Positions 16,094-57,924 of a stretch of DNA of 64,000 nt are shown piece by piece; the first letter of the stretch is position 1; each line of letters starts with the position of its first letter. This stretch comes from Macrostomum lignano (Eukaryota). The DNA lies in contig NIVC01001300.1 in the NCBI GenBank assembly GCA_002269645.1, forward strand, positions 1 through 64,000, in the 5' to 3' direction. The notes under the pieces are model-generated. The model was not told the origin of the DNA. It did not search any database and saw only the letters and a program-made list of their open reading frames with translations. The position numbers and the translations under genes are program-made.

Positions 16094-19207
<3,114 letters not shown>

Positions 19208-33625: not shown

Positions 33626-34769
33626 GAAGGAACGCAGAGACACTGGAGCAATGGAATTGGGGACTCCACTCACAATTCAATGATCTCTATGAAGGGCACA
33701 CATGGGGAGTTCGGTTGAGTGCAAAACTCAGCGGCAAGAAGTATTTGCGAACTCGGACTAAAAAATGGCAGTACTGAATGACTCACTCACTCATCCCGCC
33801 AGCCAAGTGCAGCGACCCGCCAGCCATTGTCAGAGCAGTGGAATTTTACCGCTGGCAAGAGTGGGGCAGACAATGAAGCCCCACCTACTCTGCAGCTACC
33901 TGCTTGCGCCAGCCTGAGTTTGAGCTGAGCAAAAACTCCATAGCTATACGAGCTACAACTCAGTATAAGAATTGAAGTCCACACACTGGGCAGTATAGAC
34001 TCTGCTACGCTGTCTGCATTGGGAGGGTATAATTAGTTATCAGATAGCGACAGAGCCGCAATTCATGCAGTAGCAGTGACAGGCTTTGGAGACAAAAGCT
34101 GTCGAGCTCAGAGCTTCGTGCCGCAACTCGCCCCGACGCGACTGACTCAAGTAACAATACAAGTATGCGAGTATCTTTCACATGCATCGATGTTCTGTAA
34201 AAGACCACTAAGGAATAGCAAGCTTTCAGCAGCAGAAGTAGTGAGGTTTGAAAAGCACAAAATGCAGGCCGCGAACAGTTCGCTCAGACCAGAGGAAAGA
34301 ATTTGTCAGCTCGAGCTTTCGACATTTAAAACAAACAGCAAACAGAGACCAGCGATTGCATAAGTATGAAATCAAGAGCTTTTAAGATTAAAATTTGGTG
34401 ATATTTTACTTAAAAAAGCACTTCTAGGTCGTACACTGGGTGGTGCCAAAGTTAGTGGAGTCTTACAATGCTACACTTTTTAACAAAAGAATCAGAATGG
34501 AACGAATCAATTCTTGCAAGCAAAACGAGTCGGTAGTATGAATGAACCTGTATGATGGCAAGTCAATAGAAATGTTGGATAAAGTCAATGAAAATGAAAG
34601 GCAGTGACAATCACCCGGTGACAATTTCCGACTACCTCTCTCTCTACCTCTATCCCCACTTCTCTTATCCTTGTAATCCATATCTTGACTCGCCGCGTCA
34701 TCATTTTTTGCAGAAAAAAGGCCGCAAGGATAGAACGTAAAAGTATTTTAATTATCATTTTTTAAGCAC

Positions 34770-36085
34770 AAGCATTGGTGACCACAGCATTGGTGAACAC
34801 AGCATTGGTGAACACAGAATTGGTGAACACAGCATTGGTGAACACAGCATTGGTGAACACAGCATTGGTGAACACAGCATTGGTGAACACAGCATTGGTG
34901 ACCACAGCATTGGTGACCACAGCATTGGTCACCACAGCATTGGTGACCACAGCATTGGTGACCACAGCATTGGTGACACACAGAATTGGTGAACACAGCA
35001 TTGGTGACCACAGCATTGGTAAGCACAGCATTAGTGAACACAGCATTGGTAAACACAGCATTGGTAAACACAGCATTAGTGACCACAGCATTGGTGAACA
35101 CAGCATTGGTGACCACAGCATTGGTAAACACAGCATTGGTGACCACAGCATTGGTAAACACAGCATTGGTGACCACAGCATTGGTAAACACAGCATTAGT
35201 GAACACAGCATTGGTAAACACAGCATTGGTAAACACAGCATTAGTGAACACAGCATTGGTGACCACAGCATTGGTGACCACAGCATTGGTAAACACAGCA
35301 TTGGTGAACACAGCATTGGTGAACACAGCATTGGTGAACACAGCATTGGTGAACACAGCATTGGTGAACACAGCATTGGTGACCACAGCATTGGTCACCA
35401 CAGCATTGGTGACCACAGCATTGGTGACCACAGCATTGGTGACCACAGCATTGGTGAACACAGCATTGGTGAACACAGCATTGGTGACCACAGCATTAGT
35501 AAACACAGCATTAGTAAACACAGCATTAGTAAACACAGCATTAGTGAACACAGCATTGGTAAACACAGCAATAGTGAACACAGCATTAGTAAACACAGCA
35601 TTGGTGACCACAGCATTGGTGAACACAGCATTGGTAAACACAGCATTGGTGACCACAGCATTGGGTAAACACAGCATTAGTGAACACAGCATTGGTAAAC
35701 ACAGCATTAGTAAACACAGCATTAGTAAACACAGCATTAGTAAACACAGCATTGGTGACCACAGCATTAGTAAACACAGCATTAGTGAACACAGCATTGG
35801 TAAACACAGAATTAGTGAACACAGCATTAGTAAACACAGCATTAGTGAACACAGCATTAGTAAACACAGCATTGGTGACCACAGCATTGGTGAACACAGC
35901 ATTGGTGACCACAGCATTGGTGAACACAGCATTAGTGAACACAGCATTGGTAAACACAGCTTTAGTGAACACAGCATTAGTAAACACAGCATTGGTGACC
36001 ACAGCATTGGTGAACACAGCATTGGTGACCACAGCATTGGTGACCACAGCATTGGTGAACACAGCATTGGTAAACACAGCATTTG
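34770..36085. repeat. 15-bp minisatellite (CACAGCATTGGTGAA)n, ~85-90 copies
   Basis: Direct reading; ends ~50 bp upstream of the CCAAT box of orphan ORF A. Confidence 0.97.
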
Positions 36086-36137
36086 CAGGCTGCATGCGAT
36101 ATATTGCTTGGCCTCTGCGTATGGCTGTGCAGCCCAG

Positions 36138-36190
36138 CCAATGGGAGCAGACCTTGCCGAGGACAGAGTTAAGACAAGTTCATTATAAAA
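36138..36190 (+). promoter_or_regulatory. CCAAT box (36138-36142) and TATA box TATAAAA (36184-36190) of orphan ORF A
   Basis: Same motifs with identical 46-bp spacing in copy B. Confidence 0.7.
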
Positions 36191-36236
36191 AGAACAGCTT
36201 TGGGTGAGTGAAGAAGTTTAAAGAGGAGTTGCAAGC

Positions 36237-36569
36237 ATGTCAAATACTGTCGTAAACCAAAGTCTAAATGGAAGCTGTTCTGTTCCGCCTTTCGGGCGCG
36301 GCGGCGACCTGTGGAGTATATTCAGTAACGTTGCAATTTATTTATATAATTATTTGAGAGAAAATCCATATCTTATAAATACAGGAATTAATTTTATTCG
36401 TGAAGTTGCTGATAGATCGAGAGGAGGAAATATTGCTACAATTTTTACTGCCATCTTTAGTGTAGCGGGAGGTCATTTAATGAACTATTACACAGAAGAT
36501 CCCAGTAGGATATTTCAAACCATTGACAATATTACTCAATATATAGTAAATCGAAACTCGAATAATTAG
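36237..36569 (+). CDS. Intronless 110-aa orphan protein, copy A (predicted amphipathic helices, internal two-fold repeat)
   Basis: The paralogue at 47720-48046 keeps the frame despite many substitutions, including many synonymous ones. TATA box 53 nt upstream; AATAAA at 36583-36588. Confidence 0.8.
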   Translation: MSNTVVNQSLNGSCSVPPFGRGGDLWSIFSNVAIYLYNYLRENPYLINTGINFIREVADRSRGGNIATIFTAIFSVAGGHLMNYYTEDPSRIFQTIDNITQYIVNRNSNN

Positions 36570-37609
36570 TATATAAATTGCAAATAAACTGAAGCTACTT
36601 CAGTAGCTCCTCCCAATTTTTATTTTTTAAAATAATAATAATAATAAATAAATAAAATTAAAAAAGATAAAAAAACAAAAAAAACAAAAAAACTATTATT
36701 TTTATTTAAAAAAATAAATAATGCGGATCCGCAGACAGCAGCCTTCCCGTGGCGATCCGTGTGAGTAGCTTTCACAGTGACTGCCAAAGCAAAATGCCTG
36801 CAGGCGTCACTGCAAAGCGAAACCAATGGCTGTCTAACAAAACAATTGATGATAATTCCGGGTGGCTTAATTAATATGTAAAAATCAGTCTTTAAGCATA
36901 TGGTTATACAGTGTAAATATATGAAATAAGGTTCATGAACTAGATTGACTTTGCTTAACCAATTTTCACTAAACTTGCACCTATCAGCGTTCAAAATGCT
37001 GATATGCTGTTACAAACTATCATAGTATTTAATGTTAGACCCACCCATTTGCCTGCACTAAAACAGCCACACAGACCCAGCGTGCCCTCTCTGTGTTAAT
37101 TCATCAAACTAGCTAACTATGCAAACAAGCAAATAAGATGGGTGGGGCGGAAAAATATCACGCCACCAACCCAACACTGCCACTGCTTCTCCACTGCCGA
37201 GTTGAGTAAAGTTTGAGCTCAAACCTAAGAGAAGGACTTGTCTCAGTTCTTCGAAGTTTCTGTCTGCCGTGGCAGAGGGGTAGCAGGCGTGTAAGGTAGT
37301 TGGCGTGAGAGGCCATCAGAGACTACCTATGATAACCTGTTACAGTACCATTTTGTGGGATCATCAATAAATGTTTTTCCCGCAAAGTTACGACTCTTTA
37401 TTTGTTATTTGTTGTGTAGCTATGCAGACTGCTTAAAAATGTGCATTAATTTTTTAAGTAGTATGAAAGCTTATTACATACATGTAGCTTATACAGTACA
37501 TATTACTGGAAGTAGCGAAACCATTTTTTTCTCTTTCCTACTCGACACATTGCAAGTTATATTGGGAGAATCTGCTACTGCTAATCTGCTATTGAAGATG
37601 AAGCGAACT

Positions 37610-38560
37610 CCCTGATTTCCGATTTGCCACCTCCCTGATTTCCGATGTGCCACCTCCCTGATGTCCGATGTGCCACCTCCCTGATTTCCGATGTGCCACC
37701 TCCCTGATTTCCGATGTGCCACCTCCCTGATTTCCGATTTGCCCCCTCCCTGATTTCCGATGTGCCACCTCCCTGATGTCCGATGTGCCACCTCCCTGAT
37801 TTCCGATGTGCCACCTCCCTGATGTCCGATGTGCCACCTCCCTGATGTCCGATGTGCCACCTCCCTGATGTCCGATTTAATTGCCAGCTCCCTGATGTCC
37901 GATTTGTCACTTCCCTGATGTCCGATTTGTCACTTCCCTGATGTCCGATTTAATTGCCACCTCCTTGATGTCCGATTTAATTGCCACCTCCCTGATGTCC
38001 GATTTAATTGCCACCTCCCTGATGTCCGATTTAATTGCCACCTCCCTGATGTCCGATTTAATTGCCACCTCCCTGATGTCCGATTTAATTGCCACCTCCC
38101 TGATGTCCGATTTGCCACCTCCCTGATGTCCGATTTAATTGCCACCTCCCTGATGTCCGATTTAATTGCCACCTCCCTGATGTCCGATTTAATTGCCACC
38201 TCCCTGATGTCCGATTTAATTGCCACCTCCCTGATGTCCTATTTGCCACCTCCCTGATGTCCGATTTAATTGCCACCTCCTTGATGTCCGATTTAATTGC
38301 CACTTCCCTGATGTCCGATTTAATTGCCACTTCCTTGATGTCCGATTTAATTGCCACCTCCCTGATGTCCGATTTAATTGCCACCTCCTTGATGTCCGAT
38401 TTAATTGCCACCTCCCTGATGTCCGATTTAATTGCCACCTCCCTGATGTCCGATTTAATTGCCACCTCCTTGATGTCCGATTTAATTTCCACCTCCCTGA
38501 TGTCCGATTTGCCACCTCCCTGATGTCCGAATTGCCACCTCCCTGATGTCCGATTTGCCC
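37610..38560. repeat. 23/27-bp minisatellite (GCCACCTCCCTGATGTCCGATTT[AATT])n
   Basis: Direct reading; shorter counterpart at 50535-50810. Confidence 0.96.
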
Positions 38561-38959
38561 CCTCCCTGTGCTGCCTATCGCTGACACGCCTGCTGGCAAC
38601 AGATTCGGCTTTTGCGACCCTGGCCTCCAACTGGTGCACAGCTACTACTCCTCAGCGAAGGCTGGAAGCAGGACTGCGGGCTGCGACTGCCACGGGATGG
38701 CTGTGCTGAATCTCATAGGCTGCTACACATATGATCCACAGACCGTGCAGCACTGCGAGCTGTGCAGAGCAATGCGTGTAGGAGGTGCGGGTGTCATTTG
38801 TTAGATATAAATAGTAACTTGATTCATAGCTTAAGTTTTGCTGCGCATGTGTGCATTGCTCTACTTACAGTAGCATTCTTTGATTAAACCTTTACACAGC
38901 AACGTCACTCGGCCAGTTTTATTATTTTTTACTCGGTTTTATTATCTCAGCATCCGATC

Positions 38960-39330
38960 TAGTCGGGTATGGATCATTTACGAGTTTCTGGTTCTCAAGA
39001 GCAAACAGGTTGCACTCATTACTTTGAAATCCAGGGGAAACCTTCTTCATTGATTTCTCTAAGGGGGAGGCTGCTTTTGGTAAGATCCCTTTGTTTGAAA
39101 AAGTCTTTCTGAAAAAGTGTGCAATGAAATTCCAGCATACAGTTCCCAGATCATCAGTGTCAGGAGCTTGGGTTGGAATAAAATCGAGTCTCTTATTTAG
39201 CAGCTTCGTCTCAGGTTCAGAGAGTTGGAAGGTAAGAGGTGTAGATTTAAAATGTTGCCTTCCAGTTTGAGAGGGCTACAGTGGTCAGCTACTTTTAAGT
39301 TCTCAGCGAGGAAGTCGAAAGAGTCAAAAG
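38960..39330 (-). mobile_element. Degenerate Penelope-like element fragment (region N-terminal to the RT)
   Basis: The minus strand reads ILNL..(shift)..TFQLSEPETKLLNKRLDFIPT, resembling the NLS..LS..E..LL.KGL.F.PT motif that precedes Penelope RTs. No RT core follows. Confidence 0.5.
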
Positions 39331-40399
39331 AAACCGGCAAGCTGACCCCGTTCATTCGTCATGCAATATTCTACGAATCTTAAAAAAATCAACCAAGGAA
39401 GCAAGGCAACTGCCCTAAAACACGGCATAAAACCCCCCCCCCCGGCCCCACCCCCACGAGAAGGAGGGGTGCGTGTTGGCGAGGGGAGATGCAAACACAC
39501 GAGGGGGTGGGCAGCGTACACAAACGCCGGTCAGCGCCGTAGCGCAAATCAATCAGAAGCACCCAATTGGTTTAAAAATGGTAGAAGCAACAAGAGCAAC
39601 AGGTGAGGGCTTCCTCCTCAGCCGTACATTGAGTCAAGTTTTACAGCTGGCAAAAAGGGCGGAACTGTCTGATCTCAGAATAAGAATCGCCTCAAAGAGC
39701 GACTCGAGCCAGTGGTCCGTGCTAAGCAGCTCGTCCGGAAGAACCGGCACTGTTGACAGAGCGCAATGCTGGTTCCGCAGGGCAACAGACCTCAGTAGAA
39801 TTGGTAGGGCTGGCAGTGAGTATTGGTGAACTTCCGTGATAGCCTGGAGTTTAAGGCCACTAAAAAGCTTTAGGCAAAGGACCAGGTTCAGGCAGTCACG
39901 GGTACGGGTTGCTCAAAGATGCTGGGTAAGCTATCCGGATGTGACTTGTGGCGGTCCGGACCACTAGGGGTCTGGGGAATGTAGGTGACGCTTAGCGAGT
40001 GAAGCCGATATTCCAACCAGTGAAAGAAGCGGGATCAATTAACGCAAAATTATTTGAAGGCCCGCTTGTTTACGTATATTCGGCGATGCTCTCGCTATGA
40101 ATCTCTCAGCATCTCAGAATCTCTCATAACCTCAGAATCTGTCCTCATCTCATAATCTGTCCTCATCTCAGAATCTCTTAGCATCTCAGAATCTCTTAGC
40201 ATCTCAGAATCTCTCAGCACCTTATAAGCTCAACCCGATTAGAATTTTACACACTTAATTTTAAATTTTGCATAATAAGAGCTAAAATAATTTCTCAGAT
40301 TTTTTCGGTTTCAAATTCAAACAACAAGAAGCAACTTTATCTTTAATAAGTTCTTATAGTATTATAAAGTGGAGCCAGCTGGCTTAATCATGATCACAT

Positions 40400-41460
40400 G
40401 CAAGGCGAAAGCAGCAAGGGATTTCTGAACAGCACAATGGCGTGATTCTTGAACTTTCCGCTGCAATTTAAGTGCTCCACTGTGAGCACAACAACCGACT
40501 AATAATCTTTATCTTATCACAAAGCTTTCAACGATCGCACAGCTGCTCAAAATAGTCAACAGTTGAACTGCTGCTCACGCAGCTCTCTTGCCCAGTGTTG
40601 CTTTCGACCCTTGACGTCAGTGTCAGCTGATTCTTGGGGCTGCATTTGGCTAGCTGCTCTCCTCAAGTCAGCTCTTTGCGACTCTCTTATTGGGAAGAGC
40701 TTGCTCTGAGCTGCGTTGCTGCTTCGGTGTCTCAACTTATCTTGTTTTCTCCTGGGTCTGATTTTATGTGCGACCTGCGGCAATTTTTGTTTTTGTTTCG
40801 GTCTGTCCTTGCTGCGAATCTGAAGCTCTTGTTTGATCATCGTCTTCGTGAGACATCTCGCTTACACTCCAGTGTCCAGTTCGACATCTGCCTGCCTCGG
40901 TCAGGTGACTCCGACAGGTACGAGCTAACATGCTTAGCCAGGCCTTTGAAACAAAAGACTCCACTCCAAGACAGCCTCTGCAAGTCATGGATCTGATTTT
41001 CCATTCTAATAAAATCATGAAAACCAAGCACTCATGGCTAATGCATGGAAAATGTGCAGACAAGTTATCAGCTGAAGAAGTTTAACTTATAAAAAAGTCA
41101 AATGCACATGATTCGGCTTGGGGGCAGTCATATTGCTAATGCTTGGCATTTATTCCAATTCTGCAACATGATGAAGTGAAGTATTTGTGCTGTAATGCAT
41201 CCCAATTCAACTGTCAGGACTTTGCTTTCAGCCAATGCGTGTGCCCAGCCGACAAATCTGAGGACACGAACCCTGCCTCAGCTAATGAATGAACTCCAAT
41301 GTGCTTCAATACTTCTGTGGAAACCAATGCAAAACTCTTGTGCAATGATTGCCGCTCTCTGCTTCATCAGATCCAAGCTTAGCACAGTTTCCCCATTCAC
41401 CATCAGATTCTAGCTCAACACAGCTTCCCCATTCTCCATCAGAATTCAAACCTGAGGACC
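40400..41460. repeat. Duplicated block Y, copy 1 (homologous to 45560-46620)
   Basis: Shared CTGAACAGCACAATGG, TTCTTGAACTTTCCGCTGCA, GACGTCAGTGTCAGCTGATTCTTGGGGCTGCAT, GCCTGCCTCGGTCAGGTGACTCCGACAGGTA and CAGCTTCCCCATTCTCCATCAG. Confidence 0.88.
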
Positions 41461-41594
41461 TTCAACTTCGCAGGACATGGATTGCTTGCTTCCATGAATT
41501 TATAGCAACTTCATGACTTGTTCTAATATTTTCTATTCTCGCAGGAACATTTAATTGATTACTGCCTGGGTTCATTCCCTAAAGGTTCATCTGG

Positions 41595-42345
41595 ATCTGT
41601 GCTGTAGCTGTGTGTGCTGTAGCTGTGTGCTGTAGCTGTGTGCTGTAGCTGTGTGCTGTAGCTGTGTGCTGTAGCTGTGTGTGCTGTAGCTGTGTGCTGT
41701 AGCTGTTTGTGCTGTAGCTGTGTGTGCTGTAGCTGTGTGTGCTGTAGCTGTGTGCTGTAGCTGTGTGCTGTAGCTGTGTGCTGTAGCTGTGTGTGCTGTA
41801 GCTGTGTGCTGTAGCTGTTTGTGCTGTAGCTGTGTGTGCTGTAGCTGTGTGTGCTGTAGCTGTGTGCTGTAGCTGTGTGCTGTAGCTGTGTGCTGTAGCT
41901 GTGTGCTGTAGCTGTGTGCTGTAGCTGTGTGCTGTAGCTGTGTGTGCTGTAGCTGTGTGCTGTAGCTGTGTGCTGTAGCTGTGTGCTGTAGCTGTGTGCT
42001 GTAGCTGTGTGTGCTGTAGCTGTGTGCTGTAGCTGTGTGCTGTAGCTGTGTGCTGTAGCTGTGTGCTGTAGCTGTGTGTGCTGTAGCTGTGTGCTGTAGC
42101 TGTGTGCTGTAGCTGTGTGCTGTAGCTGTGTGCTGTAGCTGTGTGCTGTAGCTGTGTGCTGTAGCTGTGTGCTGTAGCTGTGTGCTGTAGCTGTGTGCTG
42201 TAGCTGTGTGCTGTAGCTGTGTGCTGTAGCTGTGTGCTGTAGCTGTGTGCTGTAGCTGTGTGCTGTAGCTGTGTGCTGTAGCTGTGTGCTGTAGCTGTGT
42301 GCTGTAGCTGTGTGTGCTGTAGCTGTGTGCTGTAGCTGTGTGTGA
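41595..42345. repeat. 13-bp minisatellite (GTGTGCTGTAGCT)n with 15-bp variants
   Basis: Direct reading. Confidence 0.97.
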
Positions 42346-42719
42346 CAAAGGAACTGAGAAAAAAGAAACTGAGTATCAAGGTACTTCAACAGTCTAGGTG
42401 CTAACAATAGCATTACACAGAACCAGTTTAGGGAGAATATGAAAATTGAAATAGATTTAATACGGAAATGGCTGTCTGGTGACATAAAGTTAGAAGTTTT
42501 CGGTGAAACTGTCAATAATTTATCAAGCACCAATCAACCAGTCGCCTGTATTCACCGAGGTGTTATTCACCTAAAAAACAACTAAATGGCCTCACACTCG
42601 CAGCAGATCATAAGCCTCATAATGCCCTTCAAACCAGAATGTGTACCAAACTGCTGAGAATTGTTACTTAACTTACTTAACGGTGAGTTTTTCTCTAGCA
42701 TTAGCTTTGGATTCTTCTC

Positions 42720-45475
42720 TGAGCACTCTCATTCAGCCCTACTCTGTGCACTCTCATTCAGCCCTACTCTGAGCACTCTCATTCAGCCCTACTCGGAGCA
42801 CTCCCATTCAGCCCTACTCTGAGCACTCTCATTCAGCCCTACTCTGAGCACTCCAATTCAGCCCTACTCTGAGCACTCTCATTCAGCCCTACTCTGAGCA
42901 CTCCCATTCAGCCCTACTCTGAGCACTCCCATTCAGCCCTACTCTGAGCACTTCCATTCAGCCCTACTCTGAGCACTCTCATTCAGCCCTACTCTGAGCA
43001 CTCTCATTCAGCCCTACTCTGAGCACTCCCATTCAGCCCTACTCTGAGCACTCTCATTCAGCCCTACTCTGAGCACTCCAATTCAGCCCTACTCTGAGCA
43101 CTCTCATTCAGCCCTACTCTGAGCACTCCCATTCAGCCCTACTCTGAGCACTCCCATTCAGCCCTACTCTGAGCACTCCAATTCAGCCCTACTCTGAGCA
43201 CTCCCATTCAGCCCTACTCTGAGCACTCTCATTCAGCCCTACTCTGAGCACTCCCATTCAGCCCTACTCTGAGCACTCTCAATCAGCCCTACTCTGAGCA
43301 CTCTCATTCAGCCCTACTCTGAGCATTCCAATTCAGCCCTACTCTGAGCACTCTCATTCAGCCCTACTCTGAGCACTCCCATTCAGCCCTACTCTGAGCA
43401 CTCCCATTCAGCCCTACTCTGAGCACTCCCATTCAGCCCTACTCTGAGCACTCCAATTCAGCCCTACTCTGAGCACTCCAATTCAGCCCTACTCTGAGCA
43501 CTCCAATTCAGCCCTACTCTGAGCACTCCCATTCAGCCCTACTCTGAGCACTCCCATTCAGCCCTACTCTGAGCACTCCCATTCAGCCCTACTCTGAGCA
43601 CTCCCATTCAGCCCTACTCTGAGCACTCCAATTCAGCCCTACTCTGAGCACTCCAATTCAGCCCTACTCTGAGCACTCCAATTCAGCCCTACTCTGAGCA
43701 CTCCCATTCAGCCCTACTCTGAGCACTCCAATTCAGCCCTACTCTGAGCACTCTCATTCAGCCCTACTCTGAGCACTCCCATTCAGCCCTACTCTGAGCA
43801 CTCCAATTCAGCCCTACTCTGAGCACTCTCATTCAGCCCTACTCTGAGCACTCCAATTCAGCCCTACTCTGAGCACTCTCAATCAGCCCTACTCTGAGCA
43901 CTCTCAATCAGCCCTACTCTGAGCACTCTCAATCAGCCCTACTCTGAGCACTCCCATTCAGCCCTACTCTGAGCACTCTCATTCAGCCAGCCCTACTCTG
44001 AGCACTCTCATTCAGCCCTACTCTGAGCACTCTCAATCAGCCCTACTCTGAGCACTCTCATTCAGCCCTACTCTGAGCACTCCCATTCAGCCCTACTCTG
44101 AGCACTCTCATTCAGCCCTACTCTGAGCACTCTCAATCAGCCCTACTCTGAGCACTCTCAATCAGCCCTACTCTGAGCACTCTCAATCAGCCCTACTCTG
44201 AGCACTCCCATTCAGCCCTACTCTGAGCACTCTCATTCAGCCAGCCCTACTCTGAGCACTCTCATTCAGCCCTACTCTGAGCACTCTCAATCAGCCCTAC
44301 TCTGAGCACTCTCATTCAGCCCTACTCTGAGCACTTCCATTCAGCCGTACTCTGAGCACTCTCATTCAGCCCTACTCTGAGCACTCCCATTCAGCCCTAC
44401 TCTGAGCACTCCCATTCAGCCCTACTCTGAGCACTCCCATTCAGCCCTACTCTGAGCACTCTCATTCAGCCCTACTCTGAGCACTCTCAATCAGCCCTAC
44501 TCTGAGCACTCTCAATCAGCCCTACTCTGAGCACTCCCATTCAGCCCTACTCTGAGCACTCCCATTCAGCCCTACTCTGAGCACTCCCATTCAGCCCTAC
44601 TCTGAGCACTCCCATTCAGCCCTACTCTGAGCACTCCCATTCAGCCCTACTCTGAGCACTCTCATTCAGCCCTACTCTGAGCACTCTCAATCAGCCCTAC
44701 TCTGAGCACTCTCAATCAGCCCTACTCTGAGCACTCCCATTCAGCCCTACTCTGAGCACTCCCATTCAGCCCTACTCTGAGCACTCTCATTCAGCCCTAC
44801 TCTGAGCACTCTCATTCAGCCCTACTCTGAGCACTCTCAATCAGCCCTACTCTGAGCACTCTCAATCAGCCCTACTCTGAGCACTCCCATTCAGCCCTAC
44901 TCTGAGCACTCTCATTCAGCCCTACTCTGAGCACTCTCATTCAGCCCTACTCTGAGCACTCTCAATCAGCCCTACTCTGAGCACTCTCAATCAGCCCTAC
45001 TCTGAGCACTCCCATTCAGCCCTACTCTGAGCACTCTCATTCAGCCCTACTCTGAGCACTCCCATTCAGCCCTACTCTGAGCACTCTCATTCAGCCCTAC
45101 TCTGAGCACTCCCATTCAGCCCTACTCTGAGCACTCTCAATCAGCCCTACTCTGAGCACTCCCATTCAGCCCTACTCTGAGCACTCTCAATCAGCCCTAC
45201 TCTGAGCACTCTCAATCAGTCCTACTCTGAGCACTCTCATTCAGCCCTACTCTGAGCACTCTCATTCAGCCCTACTCTGAGCACTCCCATTCAGCCCTAC
45301 TCTGAGCACTCTCAATCAGCCCTACTCTGAGCACTCCCATTCAGCCCTACTCTGAGCACTCTCATTCAGCCCTACTCTGAGCACTCCCATTCAGCCCTAC
45401 TCTGAGCACTCTCAATCAGCCCTACTCTGAGCACTCTCAATCAGCCCTACTCTGAGCACTCTCAATCAGCCCATC
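42720..45475. repeat. ~2.75-kb 25-bp satellite (CAGCCCTACTCTGAGCACTCTCATT)n, ~110 copies
   Basis: Direct reading; variation is confined mostly to the CTCTCATT/CTCCCATT/CTCCAATT/CTCTCAAT positions. Confidence 0.98.
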
Positions 45476-45559
45476 TCTGAGCCAACTCGAATGCAGCTCA
45501 CTTTAAAGCCGTGCTTCTTCAGCTACCAAATAATTTTACGAATGAAAAAATGCTGAACC

Positions 45560-46620
45560 ATAACCACATGCAAACACACACGTAGCGAAGGATTAGCTGA
45601 ACAGCACAATGGCTCGATTCTTGAACTTTCCGCTGCAGTCAAAGTGTTTCACTGTGAGCTCCACAACAGACTGACAATGTTTATCTTATCACAAAGCTTT
45701 CAAAATTCGCGCAGCTACTCAAGATAGTTCACAGTTGAACTGCTGCTCATGCAGCTCTCTTGCCCAGTGTTGCTTACGACTATTGACGTCAGTGTCAGCT
45801 GATTCTTGGGGCTGCATGACTGCTCTTCTCAGGTGAGCTCCCTTATCGGTCGACTCTCTTATCGGGAAGACCTTGCTTGATCTGAGCTCAGGTGCAGCTT
45901 CGGTGGCTCCACTTATCTTGTTTTTCTACAGTGTCTGCCTTGAGGTGCCACCTGTGGCACTTTTGCCCTTTTCGGTTTGTCCTTGCTGCGAATCTGAGCT
46001 TTTGTTTGGTAATCGTCTTCGGGAGACACCTCAAATGGCACCCCAGTGTCCAGTCTGACCTCCGCCTGCCTCGGTCAGGTGACTCCGACAGGTAGCATGC
46101 TCAGCCAGGCCTTTGACGCTAAGCCTTGATCCTACGCACCACCTGCTCATGGATTTGTTGCTCACCAGACTCTTTCCATAGCATTTCGAAAACCTTTTGC
46201 TTCTGCAAGCGAAATTCACTGGGAGTTTTTGACAAATCCAGCATTGCTTATTCTTGACATTTTTTGAAACTCTGCAACATGTTGAAGTGAAATATTTTCT
46301 GCTGCAAGACAGGACTTTGCTTCTAGCCTATGCAAGCGCCCAGTCAGCAAAGCTGAGGAAAACTCAGCTTCCCCATTCTCCATCAGATCCCAGCACAGCT
46401 TCTCCGTTCTCCATCAGATCCCAGCACAGCTTCCCCATTCTCCATCAGATCCCAGCACAGCTTCCCTATTCTCCATCAGATCCCAGCTCAGCTTCCCCAT
46501 TCTCCAGCAGATCCCAGCTTAGCTTTCCCATTCTCCATCAGATCCCAGCTCAGCTTCCCCATTCTCCATCAGATCCCAGCTCAGCTTCCCCATTCTCCAT
46601 CAGATTCCGAATTTCTGTCT
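45560..46620. repeat. Duplicated block Y, copy 2, ending in an expanded 31-bp minisatellite (46365-46600)
   Basis: Homology to 40400-41460. The unit CAGCTTCCCCATTCTCCATCAGATCCCAGCT is present ~2x in copy 1 and ~8x here. Confidence 0.88.
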
Positions 46621-46689
46621 TTTATCATCTCTGATCTCTGAAATGTTGCGATGCGGTTTTGAGTTGAGGAGCAGCAAATTTTCTTGGCA

Positions 46690-47102
46690 TCGCTAAAATC
46701 AGTGCCTCACTGAAGCGGCGACAAACTGAGTGCCTGCGGCGCTAAAATGAGTGCCTGCGGCGCTAAAATGAGTGCCTGCGGCGCTAAAATGAGTGCCTGC
46801 AGCGCCAAAATGAGTGCCTGCAGCGCTAAAATGAGTGCCTGCAGCGCTAAAATGAATGCCTGCGGCGCTAAAATGAGTGCCTGCGGCGCTAAAATGAGTG
46901 CCTGCGGCGCTAAAATGAGTGCCTGCAGCGCCAAAATGAGTGCCTGCGGCGCCAAAATGAGTGCCTGCGGCGCTAAATTGAGTGCTGACAACACCGATCC
47001 TGAAAATAATCGGTACATGATAATGTGCATTTTCCATGTAAAAAATCACACTCGATGGGGGGGGGGGCGTGCCCTGTGCCCCCCCCCCTAAATCCGCCAC
47101 TG
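46690..47102. mobile_element. Truncated MITE-like element with the 21-bp minisatellite and one CAGTGGCGGATTT-type terminus
   Basis: The array GAGTGCCTGCGGCGCTAAAAT is the reverse complement of the array in the 3217-3797 MITE. It ends in a G-run/C-run hairpin and AAATCCGCCACTG. No matching left TIR or TSD was found. Confidence 0.55.
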
Positions 47103-47434
47103 AACCTGCCCCCCCCCCAGTGTTTGAAATGTTCCTGCGCCCATGAGCAAAAACGGGTTGGAAGTGTGAATGAACCTGTATATGATGGCTAGGCAATAGA
47201 AATGTTGGATAAAGTCAATGAAAATGAAAGTCAGTGACAAGCAAACGGTGAGAAGTTCCGACTACCATGTACTCTCTCTACCTTTCTCCCCTACCTGTCC
47301 TACCTTTGGGATCCCATATCTGGACTCGCCGCATCATAAAGATATTTTGATTTTAATTTTTGTCAATAAATTAAAATTAATTTTGTAATAAATACTTGTA
47401 AGGCAATCTAATTACACGTTTTTATTTTTAGGCA

Positions 47435-47545
47435 CCAGCATTGGTGAATACAGCATTGGTGAGCACAGCATTGGTGAACACAGCCATTGGTGAACACAGC
47501 ATTGGTGACGACAGCATTGGGTAAACACAGCATTGATAAACATAG
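47435..47545. repeat. 15-bp CACAGCATTGGTGAA array, ~6 copies
   Basis: Same position relative to the promoter as the long array in copy A. Confidence 0.9.
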
Positions 47546-47623
47546 AATTTGCGCTAGTGCTGATAAGGCTGCTGTATGCGATACATTTATTGCTTGGCCT
47601 CTGCGTGTGTCTGTGCAGCCCAG

Positions 47624-47676
47624 CCAATGGGAGAAGACCTTGCCGAGGACAGAGATAAGCGAAGTTCATTATAAAA
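47624..47676 (+). promoter_or_regulatory. CCAAT (47624-47628) and TATAAAA (47670-47676) of orphan ORF B
   Basis: Conserved sequence and spacing with copy A. Confidence 0.7.
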
Positions 47677-47719
47677 CTAGCTTTGGGCGAGTGCAGAAGT
47701 AATTAGAGGATCGGCAAAC

Positions 47720-48046
47720 ATGTCTAACACTACTGTCGAAAACCAAAGTCGTAACGGAAGCTTTTTTGTTACGCCTTCTGGGCTCGACGGCGACATGTGG
47801 AGCATCTTAAGTAACGTTGCAACTTATTTGTTTAATTTTTTGAGAGAAAATCCAAATCTTATAATTACAGGAATTGATATTATTCGTGAAATTGCTGATA
47901 GGTTGAGAGGGAAAAATTTTACGACGATTTTTACTGCTATCTTTCAGGTAGCAAGAAATCGTTTATTGAACTATTACAGAGAAGATCCTAGTAGGATATT
48001 TCAAACCATTGATTATATTATTGAATATTTTAACTCTGATAATTAG
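47720..48046 (+). CDS. Intronless 108-aa orphan protein, copy B
   Basis: Roughly two-thirds identical to copy A; AATAAA at 48060-48065. Confidence 0.8.
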   Translation: MSNTTVENQSRNGSFFVTPSGLDGDMWSILSNVATYLFNFLRENPNLIITGIDIIREIADRLRGKNFTTIFTAIFQVARNRLLNYYREDPSRIFQTIDYIIEYFNSDN

Positions 48047-48279
48047 TAAATAAGTTGCTAATAAACTTAAGGTACTTCAGTAGTTCCTCTCGTTTTTTTT
48101 CTTTAAAAAAAAACGCGGATCCACAGACAGCAGCCTTCCCGTGGCGATCCGTGTGAGTAGCTTTCACAGTGACTGGCCATGGCAACCGCCAAAGCGTCAC
48201 TGCAAAGCGAAACCAATGGCTGTCTAACAGAACAATTGATGATAATTCCGGGTGGCTTAATTAATGTGCAAAAAACTGT

Positions 48280-49085
48280 TGTCACGTTATTTTATGTTGG
48301 CCGTGACCCTTAAAAGGGCCGTTTTAGTCCCAAAATAAGTTGAAGTCAACTTAGGCGAAGTGGATGGTGTAGCGGAGCACTTGGCGATAAAGGCAGGAAC
48401 TGCCGTAGTTGTCTTTATTGTTAATATCAGTATCAAGTTTGGTTGTTACTGGCAATAAACAGACTATAGCTTTCTGGGCACTGGCGGCTGCAACAATGGG
48501 TTGAATATAATTTGGATATGAAGTCAAGTGGCAGGCGAATGACACAATGGCGACGTGACGTGAGCAGTGGCTATGAGCACAGTGAAGGCAGTGAAACGTA
48601 GTGGCGAGTTTGGCGTCGGTCGTGGCGTGAGACAGTCAAGTAAGTGTGTGAGCAGGCTGGCCCAGGCAGAGGGGCCGTGGTGAGAAACAAGGAGGCTCGA
48701 GGCAGCCAGACAAACAGATAAGACAGCTAAGAGGCAGCAGGGAAGAAAACCAAGAGAGCGAGAGGAGAGTGGAGTGCCCGCCGCCAGGCGGGGGGGTTTA
48801 ATAAAAGAGCGCAGAGGGGGGTAGCGCGAGCACGAGTGATTTCATTGGCTGGCGAGAGAACTTAAAATTATCGATCGTGCCAATTTGATACGGTCGCGAG
48901 AGAGGATAGCAAAATATACAGTGAATTAGAAATTGCCACAAAATCGTTGGGCACTACTACAAGTAAACGTCGCAATAAACAAATGGAAAAGTTTAGTTGA
49001 AACGGTGAAACTGAAGGGTTGAAACTATAGAGAAACAGCAGTCCAACGGCCCTTTTCGGGACCACCTTAAACTGACAACGTCACA
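48280..49085. mobile_element. Solo LTR, Ty3/Gypsy-like (806 bp)
   Basis: Begins TGTCACGTT and ends AACGTCACA (TG...CA inverted ends), flanked by a 4-bp TSD CTGT (48276-48279, 49086-49089). Absent at the homologous site in copy A (~36890). Confidence 0.85.
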
Positions 49086-49432
49086 CTGTCTTTCAGCATA
49101 TGGTTATACAGTGTAGAAAATGAAATAAGCTTCATTGTGCTTAGATCGAAGCGATAAAACAAGGCTCTCCTCTTTTCTCGACCGGCGGGTAAAAAGCATG
49201 AGTATATGGAAAATATGCCTCGGCAGCTAATTAGTAGCTAAAAACAGGAAATTTTGCAATCCAGCCAAACCAGCCCTACACTAAAGGGCAGATAATAAAG
49301 CTGAGGTTCGAAGGCCAAGCCAGCAGCCTGCGAACGCGTGACACGTGTCACGTGACACAGACTCTCAGCAATGCTTTGGGGGGGAGGGTGAGGGTGATAT
49401 GGTTGCCTAACAACGGGACAGATAAAACTATT

Positions 49433-50060
49433 CGGGCAATTCACTCGCGGGCAATTCACTCGCGGGCAATTCACTCGCGGGCAATTCACTCGCGGGCAAT
49501 TCACTCGCGGGCAATTCACTCGCGGGCAATTCACTCGCGGGCAATTCACTCGCGGGCAATTCACTCGCGGGCAATTCACTCGCGGGCAATTCACTCGCGG
49601 GCAATTCACTCGCGGGCAATTCACTCGCGGGCAATTCACTCGCGGGCAATTCACTCGCGGGCAATTCACTCGCGGGCAATTCACTCGCGGGCAATTCACT
49701 CGCGGGCAATTCACTCGCGGGCAATTCACTCGCGGGCAATTCACTCGCGGGCAATTCACTCGCGGGCAATTCACTCGCGGGCAATTCACTCGCGGGCAAT
49801 TCACTCGCGGGCAATTCACTCGCGGGCAATTCACTCGCGGGCAATTCACTCGCGGGCAATTCACTCGCGGGCAATTCACTCGCGGGCAATTCACTCGCGG
49901 GCAATTCACTCGCGGGCAATTCACTCGCGGGCAATTCACTCGCGGGCAATTCACTCGCGGGCAATTCACTCGCGGGCAATTCACTCGCGGGCAATTCACT
50001 CGCGGGCAATTCACTCGCGGGCAATTCACTCGCGGGCAATTCACTCGCGGGCAATTCACA
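49433..50060. repeat. Perfect 15-bp tandem array (GGGCAATTCACTCGC)n, ~41 copies
   Basis: No variant unit seen. Confidence 0.98.
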
Positions 50061-50534
50061 TGGACCCGATTCGGAGATGTGAGCCTCACACTCAATAATA
50101 GGGCCCTCAGAGGCCAGTGTGTTAGAAATTCTTTCTGGCTTGTGAGCATAATATAGCAGGAATAAAAACTGTTATAATCAGAGACTACCGATAATAAGCG
50201 ACCTGTTACACAGCTACCATTTTGTTGGATCATCAAAATGTTTTTACCCGCGAAGTTACGACTCGTGGCTATTGAGAATTTACAGAACTTTTTATTTGGA
50301 AAGTATTTATGTAGCTAAGCACATATAAGACTGCTTAAAAATGGGCATTAATTTTTTTGTGTTTTGAAAGCTTATTACATAGTTTATACCGTACATATTA
50401 CTGGAAGTAGCAATGCCATTTTTTCGCTTCCTTTCTCGACACATTGCGAGTTATATTGGCAGATCGAATCTGCTAACGCTAATCTGCTATTGAAGACGAA
50501 TCGAACTCCGAATATCCTCAAATGAATATCCTCC

Positions 50535-50810
50535 TCCGATTTGCCACCTCCCTGATGTCCGATTTGCCACCTCCCTGATGTCCGATTTGCCACCTCCCTG
50601 ATGTCCGATTTGCCACCTCCTTGATGTCCGATTTAATTGCCACCTCCCTGATGTCCGATTTAATTGCCACCTCCCTGATGTCCGATTTTCCACCTCCCTG
50701 ATGTCCGATTTTCCACCTCCCTGATGTCCGATTTGCCACCTCCCTGATGTCCGATTTGCCACCTCCCTGATGTCCGATTTTCCACCTCCCTGATGTCCGA
50801 TTTGCCACTA
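50535..50810. repeat. 23/27-bp minisatellite, copy B counterpart of 37610-38560
   Basis: Direct reading. Confidence 0.95.
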
Positions 50811-51696
50811 TCCTAGAGTTCAGTAAATGTATAGTTCACAGAGAAATTATATCAATGCAAGCCAACAGTTTTAAGGCCAAATTATGCTAAATTTTATTCG
50901 TTCTGGGCGTCAGTCACAATTTTGGCAGTTTGGTGTGTGACTTTGAATTTAGCGAGTGGGTCCGTGGCGATTTAGGTCATAAATATTATTTACACTAATT
51001 GATAATATCGGCCAAAATCAAATTCAAACAAAATAACTCACTGCAAAAATGTCAGACACATGTACATGTAGATACACATATAGATTTGGTTTATATTTAA
51101 ATAGAATCTAAACTACATGTAGATAAACAAAATAGTATAGGGCTATATTGCTTGACACTTATTGCTGTATCAGTTGGTCAAAGAGAATTGGCTTCTGCTG
51201 CAGGGCAGCGCTGTACATTGCTGGCGAAATTAATGTACATAGTCACTACGGCAGCTCTCTTACCCTGCGATTAACTTTGAAACCACCAGCAATTTCATAT
51301 AAGCTATTTACTGCAAAAATTCCAACTGAAATTCACCAGCAGAAAATATCTTGATATTGAAGATTTCGCAGTATAGCATAATTGAAGGTAAGTTAAAAAA
51401 GTAATGAAATTTTTGCTGTAACGTATAATTTTAATGTTATTTGTACTTCAAAAAGTCAATGGTATCGTAATATAAGAACGATATACTATATAAGATATAT
51501 ATAATATTTCCCACAATTTCCCCTGTCTATGGCAAAAGAGTACATTCGTGCAAACGTCACTCAAATATTAAAATAAATTTGGCGATTTTAAATGGAAATT
51601 TTAGTACTCGTAATTATACATGTAGCTGTCATTAAAACAAACGTTTATTAAAATCCGCAACAACCCTCATATGCATACACAGAGAGAGCCGACGCA

Positions 51697-54023
51697 ATGA
51701 GACTTATCGCTTGTCTAGTCCTAGCCTTGGCCAGCTCGCTATCAATCACCGAAGCTGTCACTCCCATAGTGCTATGGCACGGCATGGGTGACAGCTGCTG
51801 CAACCCGCTGTCTCTGGGCGCCATCCAGCGCATGCTAGAGAAGCAGCTGCCTGGGGTGTACGTCTACTCGGTGCAGATCGGCAACAACATGGTTGAAGAC
51901 ATCGAGAACGGGTTCCTGTCCAACGCCAACAAGCAGGTGGAACAGGTGTGCCAGACAATCAGAGCCAATCCCAAACTGAAGGGCGGCTACAACTCCATCG
52001 GTTTCTCGCAGGGAGCTCAGTTTCTGCGCGCCCTGGTGCAGCGCTGCCCCAATCCGCCAATGCGCAACTTGGTGTCCATCGGCGGCCAGCACCAGGGTGT
52101 GTACGGTTTCCCCAGGTGTCCGGGCACCAATGTAACGCTGTGCAACTATGTCCGCGAGCTGCTCAATCTGGGAGCTTACGTGAGCTTCGTACAGAACAAG
52201 TGAGCTCAGACCTCAGATTCTATTTTATGGGGTGTCATTTAATTGGACAAGGCCCCAGTTTATTAGCGAGGCCCCAGTTCATTAGCGAGGCCCCAGTTCA
52301 TTAGCGAGGCCCCAGTTCATTAGCGAGGCCCCAGTTCATTAGCGAGGCCCCAGTTCATTAGCGAGGCCCCAGTTCATTAGCGAGGCCCCAGTTCATTAGC
52401 GAGGCCCCAGTTCATTAGCGAGGCCCCAGTTCATTAGCGAGGCCCCAGTTCATCAGATGAGGCGCCAGATCATTGGCTGAGGTGCCAGTTGATTAGATGA
52501 GGCATTAATTCTTTTGATGAAGCGCCAGTTCAATGAATTCGGCGCCAGTTCATTGGATGAGGCGCCAGTTGATTGGAAGAGGCGCCAGTTCATTGGAAGA
52601 GGCGCCAGTTCATTGGAAGAGGCGCCAGTTGATTAGATGGGGCGCCAGTTCATTGTATTTGGCGCCAAATCATTGGCTGAGGCGCCAGTTGATTGAAGAG
52701 GCGCCAGTTCATTGTATTTGGCGCCAGATCATTGGCTGAGGCGCCAGTTGATTGGATGAGGCGCCAATTCGTTGAATAAGTTCTGCACTGTATGAAGAAT
52801 CACGATATCAATGCACAAGGGATTTGCCTGCCTATAAACTATAACATAATTAATCATATTCAAATCCACTCCAGCCTCATCCAAGCCCAATACTGGCACG
52901 ATCCATTAAACGAAGAGGAATATAAGCAGAAATCAATTTTCATCGCCGACATCAACAATGAATTGGTATGACATATCAATGTGTACTTTTCTACACAGAC
53001 AACAAAAGTACATTTTACTTCAATTTGATTTAAAACTTCAGACTGTAAACCGGACTTACGCGGCCAATCTGCAAACCCTGAAAAATCTGGTGCTGGTGAA
53101 GTTCCTCAGCGACAGCATGGTGCAGCCGCGGGAGAGCGAGTGGTTCGGGTTCTATCAGCCTGGCCAGGACAAGATGGTGCTGCCATTGCGAAATACCACT
53201 CTGTACACTCAGGTGAGGGACTTGTTATTTAAGTACGTGTATTGTTTATGGTAATTTAAACTGATTAAAGATTTGAATTGCTCCCTCTGATTTTGTAGTG
53301 AACTGAAGCTCATGGAGTGACTGGATTTGGGAGTGAACTGACGTAGCTCATGGAGTGACTGGATTTGGGAGTGAACTGAAGCTCATGGAGTGACTGGATT
53401 TGGGAGTGAACTGAAGCTCATGGAGTGACTGGATTTGGGAGTGAACTGAAGCTCATGGAGTGACTGGATTTGGGAGTGAACTGAAGCTCATGGAGTGACT
53501 GGATTTGGGAGTGAACTGAAGCTCATGGAGTGACTGGATTTGGGAGTGAACTGAAGCTCATGGAGTGACTGGATTTGGGAGTGAACTGAAGCTCATGGAG
53601 TGACTGGATTTGGGAGTGAACTGAAGCTCATGGAGTGACTTGATTTTGTAGTGAACTGAAGCTCATGGAGTGACTGGATTTGGGAGTGAACTGAAGCTCA
53701 TGAAGTGACTGGATTTGGGAGTGAACTGAAGCTCATGGAGTGACTGGATTTGGGAGTGAACTGAAGCTATGGAGTGACTTGATTTTACTTGATAGCTAGC
53801 TACATGAACTTTATTGGACACAAAACAAAGGAAAGGTTGAAGTAGAATATGGTGCAATACATAAAAATGAATAAAATATTTTGCAAATTATCAGGATCGT
53901 CTGGGTCTGAAAGCGATGGATGCTGCCGGCAAGCTGAAGTTCCTGGCCTGCGAGGGCGACCACCTGCAGTTTACGGACACCTGGTTTACTCAGAACATCG
54001 TCAAGCCATACCTCTCCAACTGA
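51697..54023 (+). CDS. PPT1: Palmitoyl-protein thioesterase 1. Exons 51697-52199, 52875-52965, 53042-53212 and 53895-54023
   Basis: Signal peptide; [14 protein letters not shown]; nucleophile GFSQG; [13 protein letters not shown]; QAQYWHDP; catalytic Asp in KFLSDSMV; ESEWFGFY; DRLGLK; catalytic His in EGDHLQF. Splice phases are consistent and the frame is intact. Confidence 0.97.
52250..52775. repeat. 19-20-bp intronic minisatellite (GAGGCCCCAGTTCATTAGC)n grading into a diverged GAGGCGCCAGTT variant
   Basis: PPT1 intron 1. Confidence 0.93.
53295..53785. repeat. 35-bp intronic minisatellite (GTGAACTGAAGCTCATGGAGTGACTGGATTTGGGA)n, ~14 copies
   Basis: PPT1 intron 3. Confidence 0.95.
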
Positions 54024-57869: not shown

Positions 57870-57924
57870 TACTGCCCATTCCGCCGACTCACCTGAGCAG
57901 GCACACACAGCAAGTACAGCCGCC

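What the first reader, a model, noticed from the sequence alone, without database searches (positions are those of the whole stretch)
34515..50810. Duplicated ~4-kb cassette encoding an AT-rich intronless orphan protein with a complete expression unit
Two collinear copies each have a VNTR, CCAAT, a 46-bp spacer, TATAAAA, a 108-110 codon ORF and AATAAA. The ORFs differ by many synonymous changes and only frame-preserving length changes, while flanks have frameshifting indels, consistent with purifying selection. About a quarter of codons end in G/C (manual count, copy A), unlike the GC3-rich host genes here, hinting at foreign (viral, TE-borne or horizontal) origin or a specialised tissue. I recognise no homologue. 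The cassette lies ~6 kb from the Mx-like gene. It is a candidate for an undescribed effector family or a gene-carrying mobile unit; function is unknown.
Basis: partly seen in the sequence, partly recalled or inferred. Interest (0 to 1): 0.8.

Follow-up and report, generated by a model that had tools for sequence, protein, structure and literature searches.

The report
Duplicated small orphan gene pair
Two diverged neighbouring copies of a short, intron-free gene, with promoter and poly(A) signals, encode a 12-kDa helical protein that matches nothing known; it is most likely a fast-evolving, lineage-restricted host gene, not a viral or mobile insert.

Summary
Two collinear copies lie at 34519-38568 (A) and 47146-50813 (B). 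Each has a 15-mer minisatellite, CCAAT, TATAAA 46 bp later, an ATG about 50 bp further on, an ORF of 110 or 108 codons, AATAAA 14 nt after the stop, and a second shared minisatellite.

The ORFs are 69% identical in protein and 83% in DNA. Both ORF length differences keep the frame (3 and 9 nt); 16 of 19 flank indels do not. dN/dS is 0.39-0.56. GC3 is 0.26/0.30, against 0.46-0.73 in neighbouring host exons.

The ORF has diverged more than its flanks (18.1% against 11.9%). The best-kept parts are the 86-bp promoter core (93%) and a non-coding block 3' of the gene (91-92%). Constraint on the protein is therefore weak.

No homologue was found in 1.84 billion protein representatives, Pfam, PDB, viral, metagenome or prokaryote collections. 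No terminal repeats, target-site duplications or transposon or viral domains were seen.

Best reading: a pair of taxonomically restricted, rapidly evolving genes made by local segmental duplication in a minisatellite-rich spacer between an Mx-like gene and PPT1. They encode a cytosolic four-helix protein of unknown function. Foreign or mobile origin is unsupported. Expression and genome-wide copy number could not be tested.

The parts
34519..34701 (.). Copy A, left shared non-coding block. Homology with copy B starts here.
   Evidence: 86.9% identity without gaps
34771..36083 (.). Copy A, 15-mer minisatellite, 87 copies. Each unit holds an inverted CCAAT (ATTGG).
36104..36189 (+). Copy A core promoter block, with CCAAT at 36138-36142 and TATAAA at 36184-36189.
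   Evidence: 93% identical to copy B with no gaps
36237..36569 (+). ORF A, 110 codons plus stop.
36583..36588 (+). Copy A AATAAA, 14 nt after the stop codon. A T-rich and then an A-rich tract follow, to about 36710.
36711..36884 (.). Copy A conserved non-coding block 3' of the gene.
   Evidence: 91-92% identity; the two 2-nt indels rule out a shared reading frame; no RNA-structure signal
37315..37611 (.). Copy A right shared non-coding blocks (37315-37396 and 37426-37611).
37624..38568 (.). Copy A 27-mer minisatellite, about 37 copies. Its end is the right border of the duplication.
47146..47337 (.). Copy B, left shared block.
47436..47549 (.). Copy B, same 15-mer minisatellite, 6.5 copies.
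47590..47675 (+). Copy B core promoter block, with CCAAT at 47624-47628 and TATAAA at 47670-47675.
47720..48046 (+). ORF B, 108 codons plus stop.
48060..48065 (+). Copy B AATAAA, 14 nt after the stop codon.
48105..48274 (.). Copy B conserved non-coding block 3' of the gene.
48275..50176 (.). B-specific insert with no counterpart in A. It includes a 15-mer array at 49433-50059 (41.8 copies, 100% identical).
50177..50509 (.). Copy B right shared blocks (50177-50264 and 50328-50509).
50535..50813 (.). Copy B 23-mer minisatellite, the same family as the 27-mer in A. It marks the right border, about 0.9 kb upstream of the PPT1 start codon.

Best explanation
The two cassettes are paralogues. A local segmental duplication made them inside a minisatellite-rich spacer between an Mx-like gene and PPT1.

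Each carries one small, intron-free RNA polymerase II gene of a taxonomically restricted (orphan) family.

Inferred working, not shown:
- A CCAAT box and a TATA box 46 bp downstream set a transcription start roughly 25-35 nt after the TATA box.
- The 5' UTR is about 20 nt and holds no upstream ATG.
- Translation starts at the first ATG, which has A at -3.
- Cleavage falls shortly after the AATAAA that lies 14 nt past the stop, giving an mRNA of about 0.4 kb.

The product is a 12.3-12.6 kDa protein, rich in Asn and Ile. It has a disordered N-terminal stretch of about 22 residues and then four helices. It has no signal peptide and no membrane span, so it is probably intracellular and soluble.

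The protein evolves fast under weak constraint, while the promoter core is well kept. A TATA promoter, no intron and a short message fit a gene whose expression is restricted or inducible. Its biochemical role cannot be read from the sequence.
For: **Shown: the duplication and its signals.**
- Collinear duplication and its borders.
- Signals at identical spacing in both copies, with the promoter core 93% identical.
- No ATG between the TATA box and the ORF.

**Shown: coding constraint.**
- Only one of six frames is open in both copies.
- A 110-codon open frame has probability 1.7e-4 per start in DNA of this composition.
- After 58 random substitutions the frame stays open in only 10-20% of simulations.
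- Both ORF indels are multiples of three, against 3 of 19 in the flanks.
- dN/dS is 0.39-0.56 by four methods.
- Fisher p=0.007, and 2.9% of neutral simulations are as low.
- Runs of identical residues carry only silent differences.

**Shown: the protein.**
- Four helices at the same positions in two independent AlphaFold runs: H25-42/44-60/66-84/90-108 and H24-43/45-62/65-85/91-106.
- The highest 19-residue hydropathy is 1.28 in A and 0.78 in B.

**Shown: orphan status.**

**From the literature.** Orphan genes are typically short, have few exons, have high nonsynonymous rates and have variable GC (review PMC10299390).
Against: - No expression data could be consulted.
- The ORF is not better conserved than its flanks. 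It has diverged more: 18.1% against 11.9%. dN (about 0.165) roughly equals the flank divergence, so constraint on the protein may be very weak or recently lost.
- AlphaFold confidence is low (pLDDT 44.8 and 60.0).
- Orphan status is weakened because the libraries lack the source genome and its close relatives. The PPT1 exon finds nothing above 65% identity, and four proteins of the window are not on record.
- With only two sequences, selection cannot be separated from gene conversion in the flanks.
Confidence: 0.55

Rival explanations
1. A decaying or never-functional ORF. The reading frame belongs to a gene that has lost its function, or is a proto-gene that is barely or never expressed. It has stayed open in both copies largely by luck since the duplication.
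For: - The ORF diverges faster than its flanks.
- dN is about equal to flank divergence.
- Differences are nearly even across codon positions, 18/18/22.
- The frame survives 58 random substitutions in 10-20% of simulations, so survival alone is weak evidence.
- No homologue was found, and structure confidence is low.
Against: - The joint chance is small for an ancestral 110-codon frame in 34% GC DNA, no stop since then, two in-frame indels, and pN/pS in the lowest 3% of neutral simulations.
- The promoter core is the best-conserved part, and the signals are placed exactly as a gene needs them.
Confidence: 0.2
2. A processed retrocopy of an unsampled, intron-containing parent gene. It was later duplicated together with a promoter acquired at the landing site.
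For: - The gene has no intron.
- An A-rich tract follows the 3' end in copy A (about 36620-36710), and a run of nine A's follows in copy B.
- The coding region is AT-rich compared with host exons.
Against: - The A-rich tract starts only after a T-rich stretch about 30 nt past AATAAA. It is mostly absent from B.
- No flanking direct repeats were seen.
- A well-conserved CCAAT/TATA promoter sits just upstream, which a retrocopy would not bring with it.
- No parent-like protein exists in the libraries.
Confidence: 0.1
3. Foreign origin. The ORF was captured from a virus, a bacterium or a transposon (cargo of a mobile unit) and placed under a host-type promoter.
For: - GC3 is 0.26-0.30 against 0.46-0.73 in host exons of the window.
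- The amino-acid make-up is of the AT-rich type.
- There are two copies.
Against: - No relative in IMG/VR contigs, BFVD structures, PHROGs, prokaryote genomes, metagenomes or 1.84 billion protein representatives.
- No terminal inverted or long direct repeats. No TSD. No transposon or viral domains in the spacer ORFs tested.
- The ORF's composition is close to that of the local spacer.
- The copies sit 11.5 kb apart within a mosaic of other local duplications. This fits segmental duplication.
Confidence: 0.08
4. The ORF is one exon of a larger spliced gene, and the apparent promoter block is an upstream exon or a regulatory element of that gene.
For: - The conserved block upstream of the ORF is open in one frame in both copies. 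In copy A it ends at a donor-like GTGAGT.
- A second conserved block lies 3' of the ORF.
Against: - The donor-like site is not kept in copy B.
- The open frame upstream is simply the stop-free minisatellite running on.
- The ORF has its own first ATG and stop, and AATAAA follows 14 nt later, in both copies.
- The 3' block has frameshifting indels.
Confidence: 0.05

Closest known systems
Taxonomically restricted (orphan) genes, including young tandem duplicates
   Same: - It is short and has no intron.
- It has no detectable homologue.
- Its nonsynonymous rate is high.
- Its composition differs from older host genes.
- It is locally duplicated.
These are the features listed for orphan genes in PMC10299390. 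Origin by divergence versus de novo emergence is discussed in PMC7028367 (abstract only).
   Different: - Whether it is truly restricted to one lineage is unknown, because the source genome and its close relatives are not in the libraries.
- Its promoter looks mature (CCAAT plus TATA, 93% conserved), unlike the weak signals often described for proto-genes.
Small intron-free, TATA-driven inducible host genes (a general class; from my own knowledge, not tested here)
   Same: - It is a compact single-exon unit.
- It has a CCAAT box and a TATA box, very short UTRs and a canonical poly(A) signal.
- It lies beside an Mx-like gene.
   Different: - No sequence or fold relation to any such family was found.
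- I noticed no known stimulus-response element when reading the promoter alignment, but I ran no motif search for one.
- Induction was not tested.
Gene-carrying transposons and endogenous viral elements
   Same: - There are two copies.
- The coding composition is unlike that of host exons.
- The product has no known relatives.
   Different: - No terminal repeats, no TSD, and no transposition or viral genes.
- The borders lie in or beside minisatellites.
- The copies are neighbours inside a patchwork of other local duplications.
Pfam PF11085 (YqhR, a bacterial membrane protein), the only family hit returned
   Same: Both ORFs give a weak match over the same part of the profile (E 0.049 and 4.5e-4).
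   Different: - The scores of 14 and 20.6 bits are below the 27-bit cut-off.
- No membrane span is predicted.
- The profile search of 1.84 billion proteins found no such relatives.

Membership tests
Taxonomically restricted (orphan) protein-coding gene | No detectable homologue outside a narrow lineage | tested here: met
   - 0 hits at E<=1e-3 in 1.84 billion representatives with a two-sequence profile.
- No hit in the word-indexed search, Pfam, PDB, NCBIfam or PHROGs.
- No hit in viral, metagenome or prokaryote DNA.
- Caveat: close relatives of the source organism are absent from the libraries.
Taxonomically restricted (orphan) protein-coding gene | The sequence evolves as coding DNA | tested here: met
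   - dN/dS is 0.39-0.56.
- pN/pS falls in the lowest 2.9% of neutral simulations.
- ORF indels are in frame; 16 of 19 flank indels are not.
- Only one frame is open in both copies.
- The signal is weak: the ORF diverges faster than its flanks.
Taxonomically restricted (orphan) protein-coding gene | Transcribed and translated | not testable with these tools
   No transcriptome, ribosome-profiling or proteome data are reachable. Only sequence signals were checked (CCAAT, TATA, A at -3, AATAAA).
Transposable element or gene-carrying mobile unit | Terminal inverted or long terminal direct repeats at the ends of the unit | tested here: not met
   - No inverted repeat of 25 bp or more in 30400-51700.
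- The masked self-comparison shows only the collinear A/B and X/X' blocks.
Transposable element or gene-carrying mobile unit | Target-site duplications at sharp shared ends | tested here: inconclusive
   The left border is sharp to within a few bases (34519 / 47146) with no repeat beside it. The right border is the end of a minisatellite, so a short TSD could not be recognised there.
Transposable element or gene-carrying mobile unit | Encodes or lies beside a transposase, reverse transcriptase or integrase | tested here: not met
   No Pfam match at E<=0.01 for the spacer ORFs tested: ten from the >=90-aa list, plus 38925-39275.
Transposable element or gene-carrying mobile unit | Many dispersed copies in the genome | not testable with these tools
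   Only the 64-kb window is available. It holds two copies, 11.5 kb apart.
Endogenous viral element | Sequence or fold similarity to a viral protein, or viral genes nearby | tested here: not met
   - IMG/VR scan: none confirmed.
- BFVD Foldseek: best E 0.65, on a low-confidence model.
- PHROGs: none.
- No viral domains in the spacer.
Processed retrogene | No intron, a 3' poly(A) remnant, flanking direct repeats and an intron-bearing parent gene | tested here: inconclusive
   - No intron: met.
- The A-rich tract is present in A, but B has only a run of nine A's, and the tract does not start at the expected cleavage site.
- No flanking repeats.
- A parent gene cannot be searched for.
Bcl-2 family (a lead from memory and from noise-level fold hits) | Match to the family's sequence profile or fold | tested here: not met
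   - No Bcl-2 Pfam hit even at E<=10.
- BFL1, Bcl-2 and BAK appear only at Foldseek E 5-10 with TM 0.2-0.3, and not at all with the second model.
Pfam PF11085 YqhR | Score at or above the curated gathering cut-off (27 bits) | tested here: not met
   14.0 and 20.6 bits.

The most novel reading that the evidence does not exclude
The two ORFs are founding members of an undescribed, fast-evolving family of small intracellular helical proteins. The family would have expanded by local duplication beside an Mx-like antiviral GTPase gene. It would either act as a lineage-specific immune or reproductive effector, or have been taken long ago from an AT-rich foreign source that is no longer recognisable.
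Probability: 0.12. Interest if true: 0.6.

Novelty: new member of a known kind. Interest (0 to 1): 0.3.

Why it matters
If the genes are expressed, they add a protein family with no known relatives and a possibly new small helical fold.

They would also be a clean example of how minisatellite-rich spacers breed and duplicate young genes. The promoter is conserved more strictly than the protein it drives.

The position beside an Mx-like gene makes an immune role worth checking in expression data, but nothing here shows such a role.

For annotation, the practical point is that homology-based gene finders would miss both ORFs.

Tried and rejected
**Homology searches, all negative**
- Word-indexed search of 5.8 billion proteins.
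- Exhaustive HMMER profile search.
- Pfam, NCBIfam and PHROGs.
- PDB by sequence and by profile.
- IMG/VR, JGI metagenome and GTDB genome scans.
- Peptide strings in the full text of papers.

**Structure**
- Two AlphaFold runs had low confidence.
- Three Foldseek searches found nothing below E 0.65.

**Source genome**
- Exact-protein look-ups for both ORFs and for two long host ORFs found nothing on record.
- The PPT1 exon found nothing closer than 61-65% identity, in a coral and in fishes.
- The Mx-like exon found nothing in the word-indexed search. That spent the last such search and shows how insensitive the tool is.
- As a result, genome-wide copy number, orthologues and the organism's identity could not be obtained.

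**RNA genes**
- No Rfam family or tRNA anywhere in the window.
- The conserved 3' block shows no significant fold (z -1.05 and -1.82) and no compensatory changes.

**Ideas rejected**
- Mobile element: no inverted repeats, no TSD and no TE domains.
- A translated minisatellite: the long ORFs across the 15-mer array are open in every frame only because the unit lacks stops.
- A membrane protein of the YqhR type: below cut-off and no hydrophobic span.
- A Bcl-2-like protein: noise only.
- False duplication of haplotypes in the assembly: 12-18% divergence and different inserts argue for true paralogues.

Full report
**1. Setting**

The window is animal nuclear DNA. About 30% of it (19,242 of 64,000 nt) is minisatellite. 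Recognisable host genes are:
- an ASC/ENaC-type channel, 4249-6218 (+) (Pfam ASC, E 3.4e-30);
- a cathepsin-D-like aspartic protease, about 16793-19021 (-), and a SCAMP, about 20718-23466 (+) (read by eye from the translations);
- a dynamin-superfamily gene, about 25577-30429 (+), with Dynamin_N and Dynamin_M. Its first exon matches human Mx1/Mx2 best in the PDB (E 3.5e-15, against 7e-10 for other dynamins);
- PPT1 from about 51697 (+).

The finding lies in the 21-kb spacer between the Mx-like gene and PPT1. The organism could not be named. The PPT1 exon finds nothing above 65% identity, and no protein of the window is on record.

**2. The observation**

BLASTN of the region against itself, with and without tandem-repeat masking, shows two collinear direct copies. 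Copy A is 34519-38568 and copy B is 47146-50813. From left to right each has:
- a shared 183-192 bp block;
- a 15-mer minisatellite (87 copies in A, 6.5 in B);
- a block of about 540 bp that holds the ORF;
- a 170-bp block;
- two further short blocks;
- a 27/23-mer minisatellite, at whose end the homology stops.

Between the 170-bp block and the right-hand blocks, A has 430 bp and B has 1.9 kb of unrelated DNA. Alignable unique DNA is therefore only about 1.3 kb of each 'about 4-kb cassette'.

- CCAAT at 36138 / 47624;
- TATAAA at 36184 / 47670, 46 bp start to start in both copies;
- the first ATG after the TATA box at 36237 / 47720, with A at -3;
- ORFs of 110 and 108 codons;
- AATAAA 14 nt after the stop.

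Only this one of six frames is open in both copies.

**3. Is it coding?**

The proteins are 69% identical. The DNA differs at 58 of 321 aligned ORF sites, about 20 synonymous and about 38 nonsynonymous.

- dN/dS is 0.44 (NG86), 0.56 (LWL85), 0.39 (YN00) and 0.42 (ML).
- The Fisher test of synonymous against nonsynonymous sites gives p=0.007.
- I simulated 58 substitutions drawn from the observed spectrum. The frame stays open in 10.5% of runs. Among those, the median pN/pS is 0.81, and only 2.9% reach the observed 0.50.
- The two ORF length differences are 3 and 9 nt. Of 19 indels in the flanks, only 3 are multiples of three.
- A 110-codon open frame in DNA of this composition has probability 1.7e-4 per start.

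Together these make a chance ORF unlikely.

The constraint is nevertheless weak.
- Differences are almost even over codon positions, 18/18/22.
- The ORF has diverged more than the non-coding flanks: 18.1% against 11.9%, p=0.009. Against the flanks without their two best-kept blocks it is 18.1% against 13.7%, p=0.10.
- The best-conserved parts are the 86-bp promoter core (93%) and a non-coding block 3' of the gene (91-92%).

This is a fast-evolving coding sequence behind a well-kept promoter. Alternatively, the flanks may have been homogenised by gene conversion. Two sequences cannot separate these readings.

**4. Composition**

GC3 is 0.26 (A) and 0.30 (B), against 0.46-0.73 in sixteen host exon ORFs of the window. 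The contrast is real. However, the non-repeat spacer around the cassettes is 39-42% GC, and the ORF's own 3' flank is 25%. The ORF (33-35% GC) resembles its local surroundings more than it points to an outside source.

**5. The product**

The protein is 12.3-12.6 kDa, with pI 6.5 (A) and 5.0 (B). It is rich in Asn and Ile. It has no hydrophobic span (highest 19-residue Kyte-Doolittle mean 1.28), and by eye it has no signal peptide.

Two AlphaFold runs agree on a disordered N-terminus followed by four helices. The two-sequence alignment gave pLDDT 44.8 and copy B alone gave 60.0, so confidence is low. Foldseek against PDB and BFVD returns nothing below E 0.65. The best matches are designed helical bundles.

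**6. Relatives**

None were found. The exhaustive profile search is the weighty negative. The word-indexed search is insensitive, as its failure on the Mx-like exon shows.

**7. Mobile or foreign?**

- No inverted repeat of 25 bp or more lies in 30400-51700.
- No repeat flanks the left borders, and the right borders lie in minisatellites.
- No transposon or viral domain occurs in the spacer ORFs tested.
- A second pair of duplicated non-coding blocks, X (40413-41447) and X' (45584-46607), is 82% identical with frameshifting indels. It lies between the cassettes.
- The order is A, X, arrays, X', B. This is not a simple tandem array. It points to repeated local rearrangement in a repeat-rich spacer, not to transposition.
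- Divergence of 12-18% and different inserts exclude an assembly artefact from two haplotypes.

**8. Verdict**

- The most likely reading (0.55) is a pair of taxonomically restricted, rapidly evolving host genes, each with a working-looking compact expression unit, that encode a small intracellular helical protein.
- Rivals are a non-functional or decaying ORF (0.2), a retrocopy of an unsampled parent gene (0.1), foreign or mobile origin (0.08), and an exon of a larger gene (0.05).
- The features match what reviews list for orphan genes: short, few exons, high nonsynonymous rate (PMC10299390).
- The mechanism beyond transcription and translation is inferred, not shown. Function is open, and nearness to the Mx-like gene is only a prompt for expression checks.
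- Interest is modest. The pair is a tidy orphan-gene candidate that annotation pipelines would miss, but nothing in it is outside known kinds.

Noticed in passing
whole window, e.g. 12093-14297, 21106-23091, 42717-45482, 49433-50059: About 30% of the window is minisatellite. The three SCAMP introns and a cathepsin-D-like intron consist almost wholly of such arrays. One 2.2-kb array has extreme strand skew. One array has 110 copies of a 25-mer. Another has 41.8 copies of a 15-mer at 100% identity.
   Followed up: partly
window 34771-36083 and 47436-47549: Every unit of the 15-mer array just upstream of both promoters holds an inverted CCAAT (ATTGG). Copy A has 87 units and copy B has 6.5. The two genes therefore differ greatly in promoter-proximal repeat length.
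   Followed up: no
window 36711-36884 and 48105-48274: A non-coding block 3' of each ORF is 91-92% identical, better kept than the ORF. It has a CCAAT and an imperfect hairpin whose loop differs between the copies. It shows no significant RNA fold, no compensatory changes and no Rfam match.
   Followed up: partly
window 40413-41447 and 45584-46607: A second duplicated non-coding module (X and X', 82% identical, with frameshifting indels and a conserved TGACGTCA) lies between the two cassettes. The resulting order, A, X, arrays, X', B, does not fit a single tandem duplication.
   Followed up: partly
window 8379-9662 (+): A long single-exon ORF (427 aa). It holds an internal Met followed by a hydrophobic, signal-peptide-like stretch. 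It has no Pfam match and is not on record in the assembly collection.
   Followed up: partly
window 57150-57932 (-) and 58430-59035 (-): Two long ORFs (about 252 and 199 aa) without any Pfam match. They may be exons of one unannotated gene.
   Followed up: no
window 51652-52200 (+): Host genes are intron-poor. One PPT1 exon covers about 135 residues that align end to end with PPT1 proteins. The nearest hits are only 61-65% identical (a coral and fishes), so the source lineage is poorly sampled.
   Followed up: partly
window 50813-51697: The right border of copy B lies only about 0.9 kb upstream of the PPT1 start codon. The cassette's terminal minisatellite may therefore adjoin the PPT1 promoter region.
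   Followed up: no
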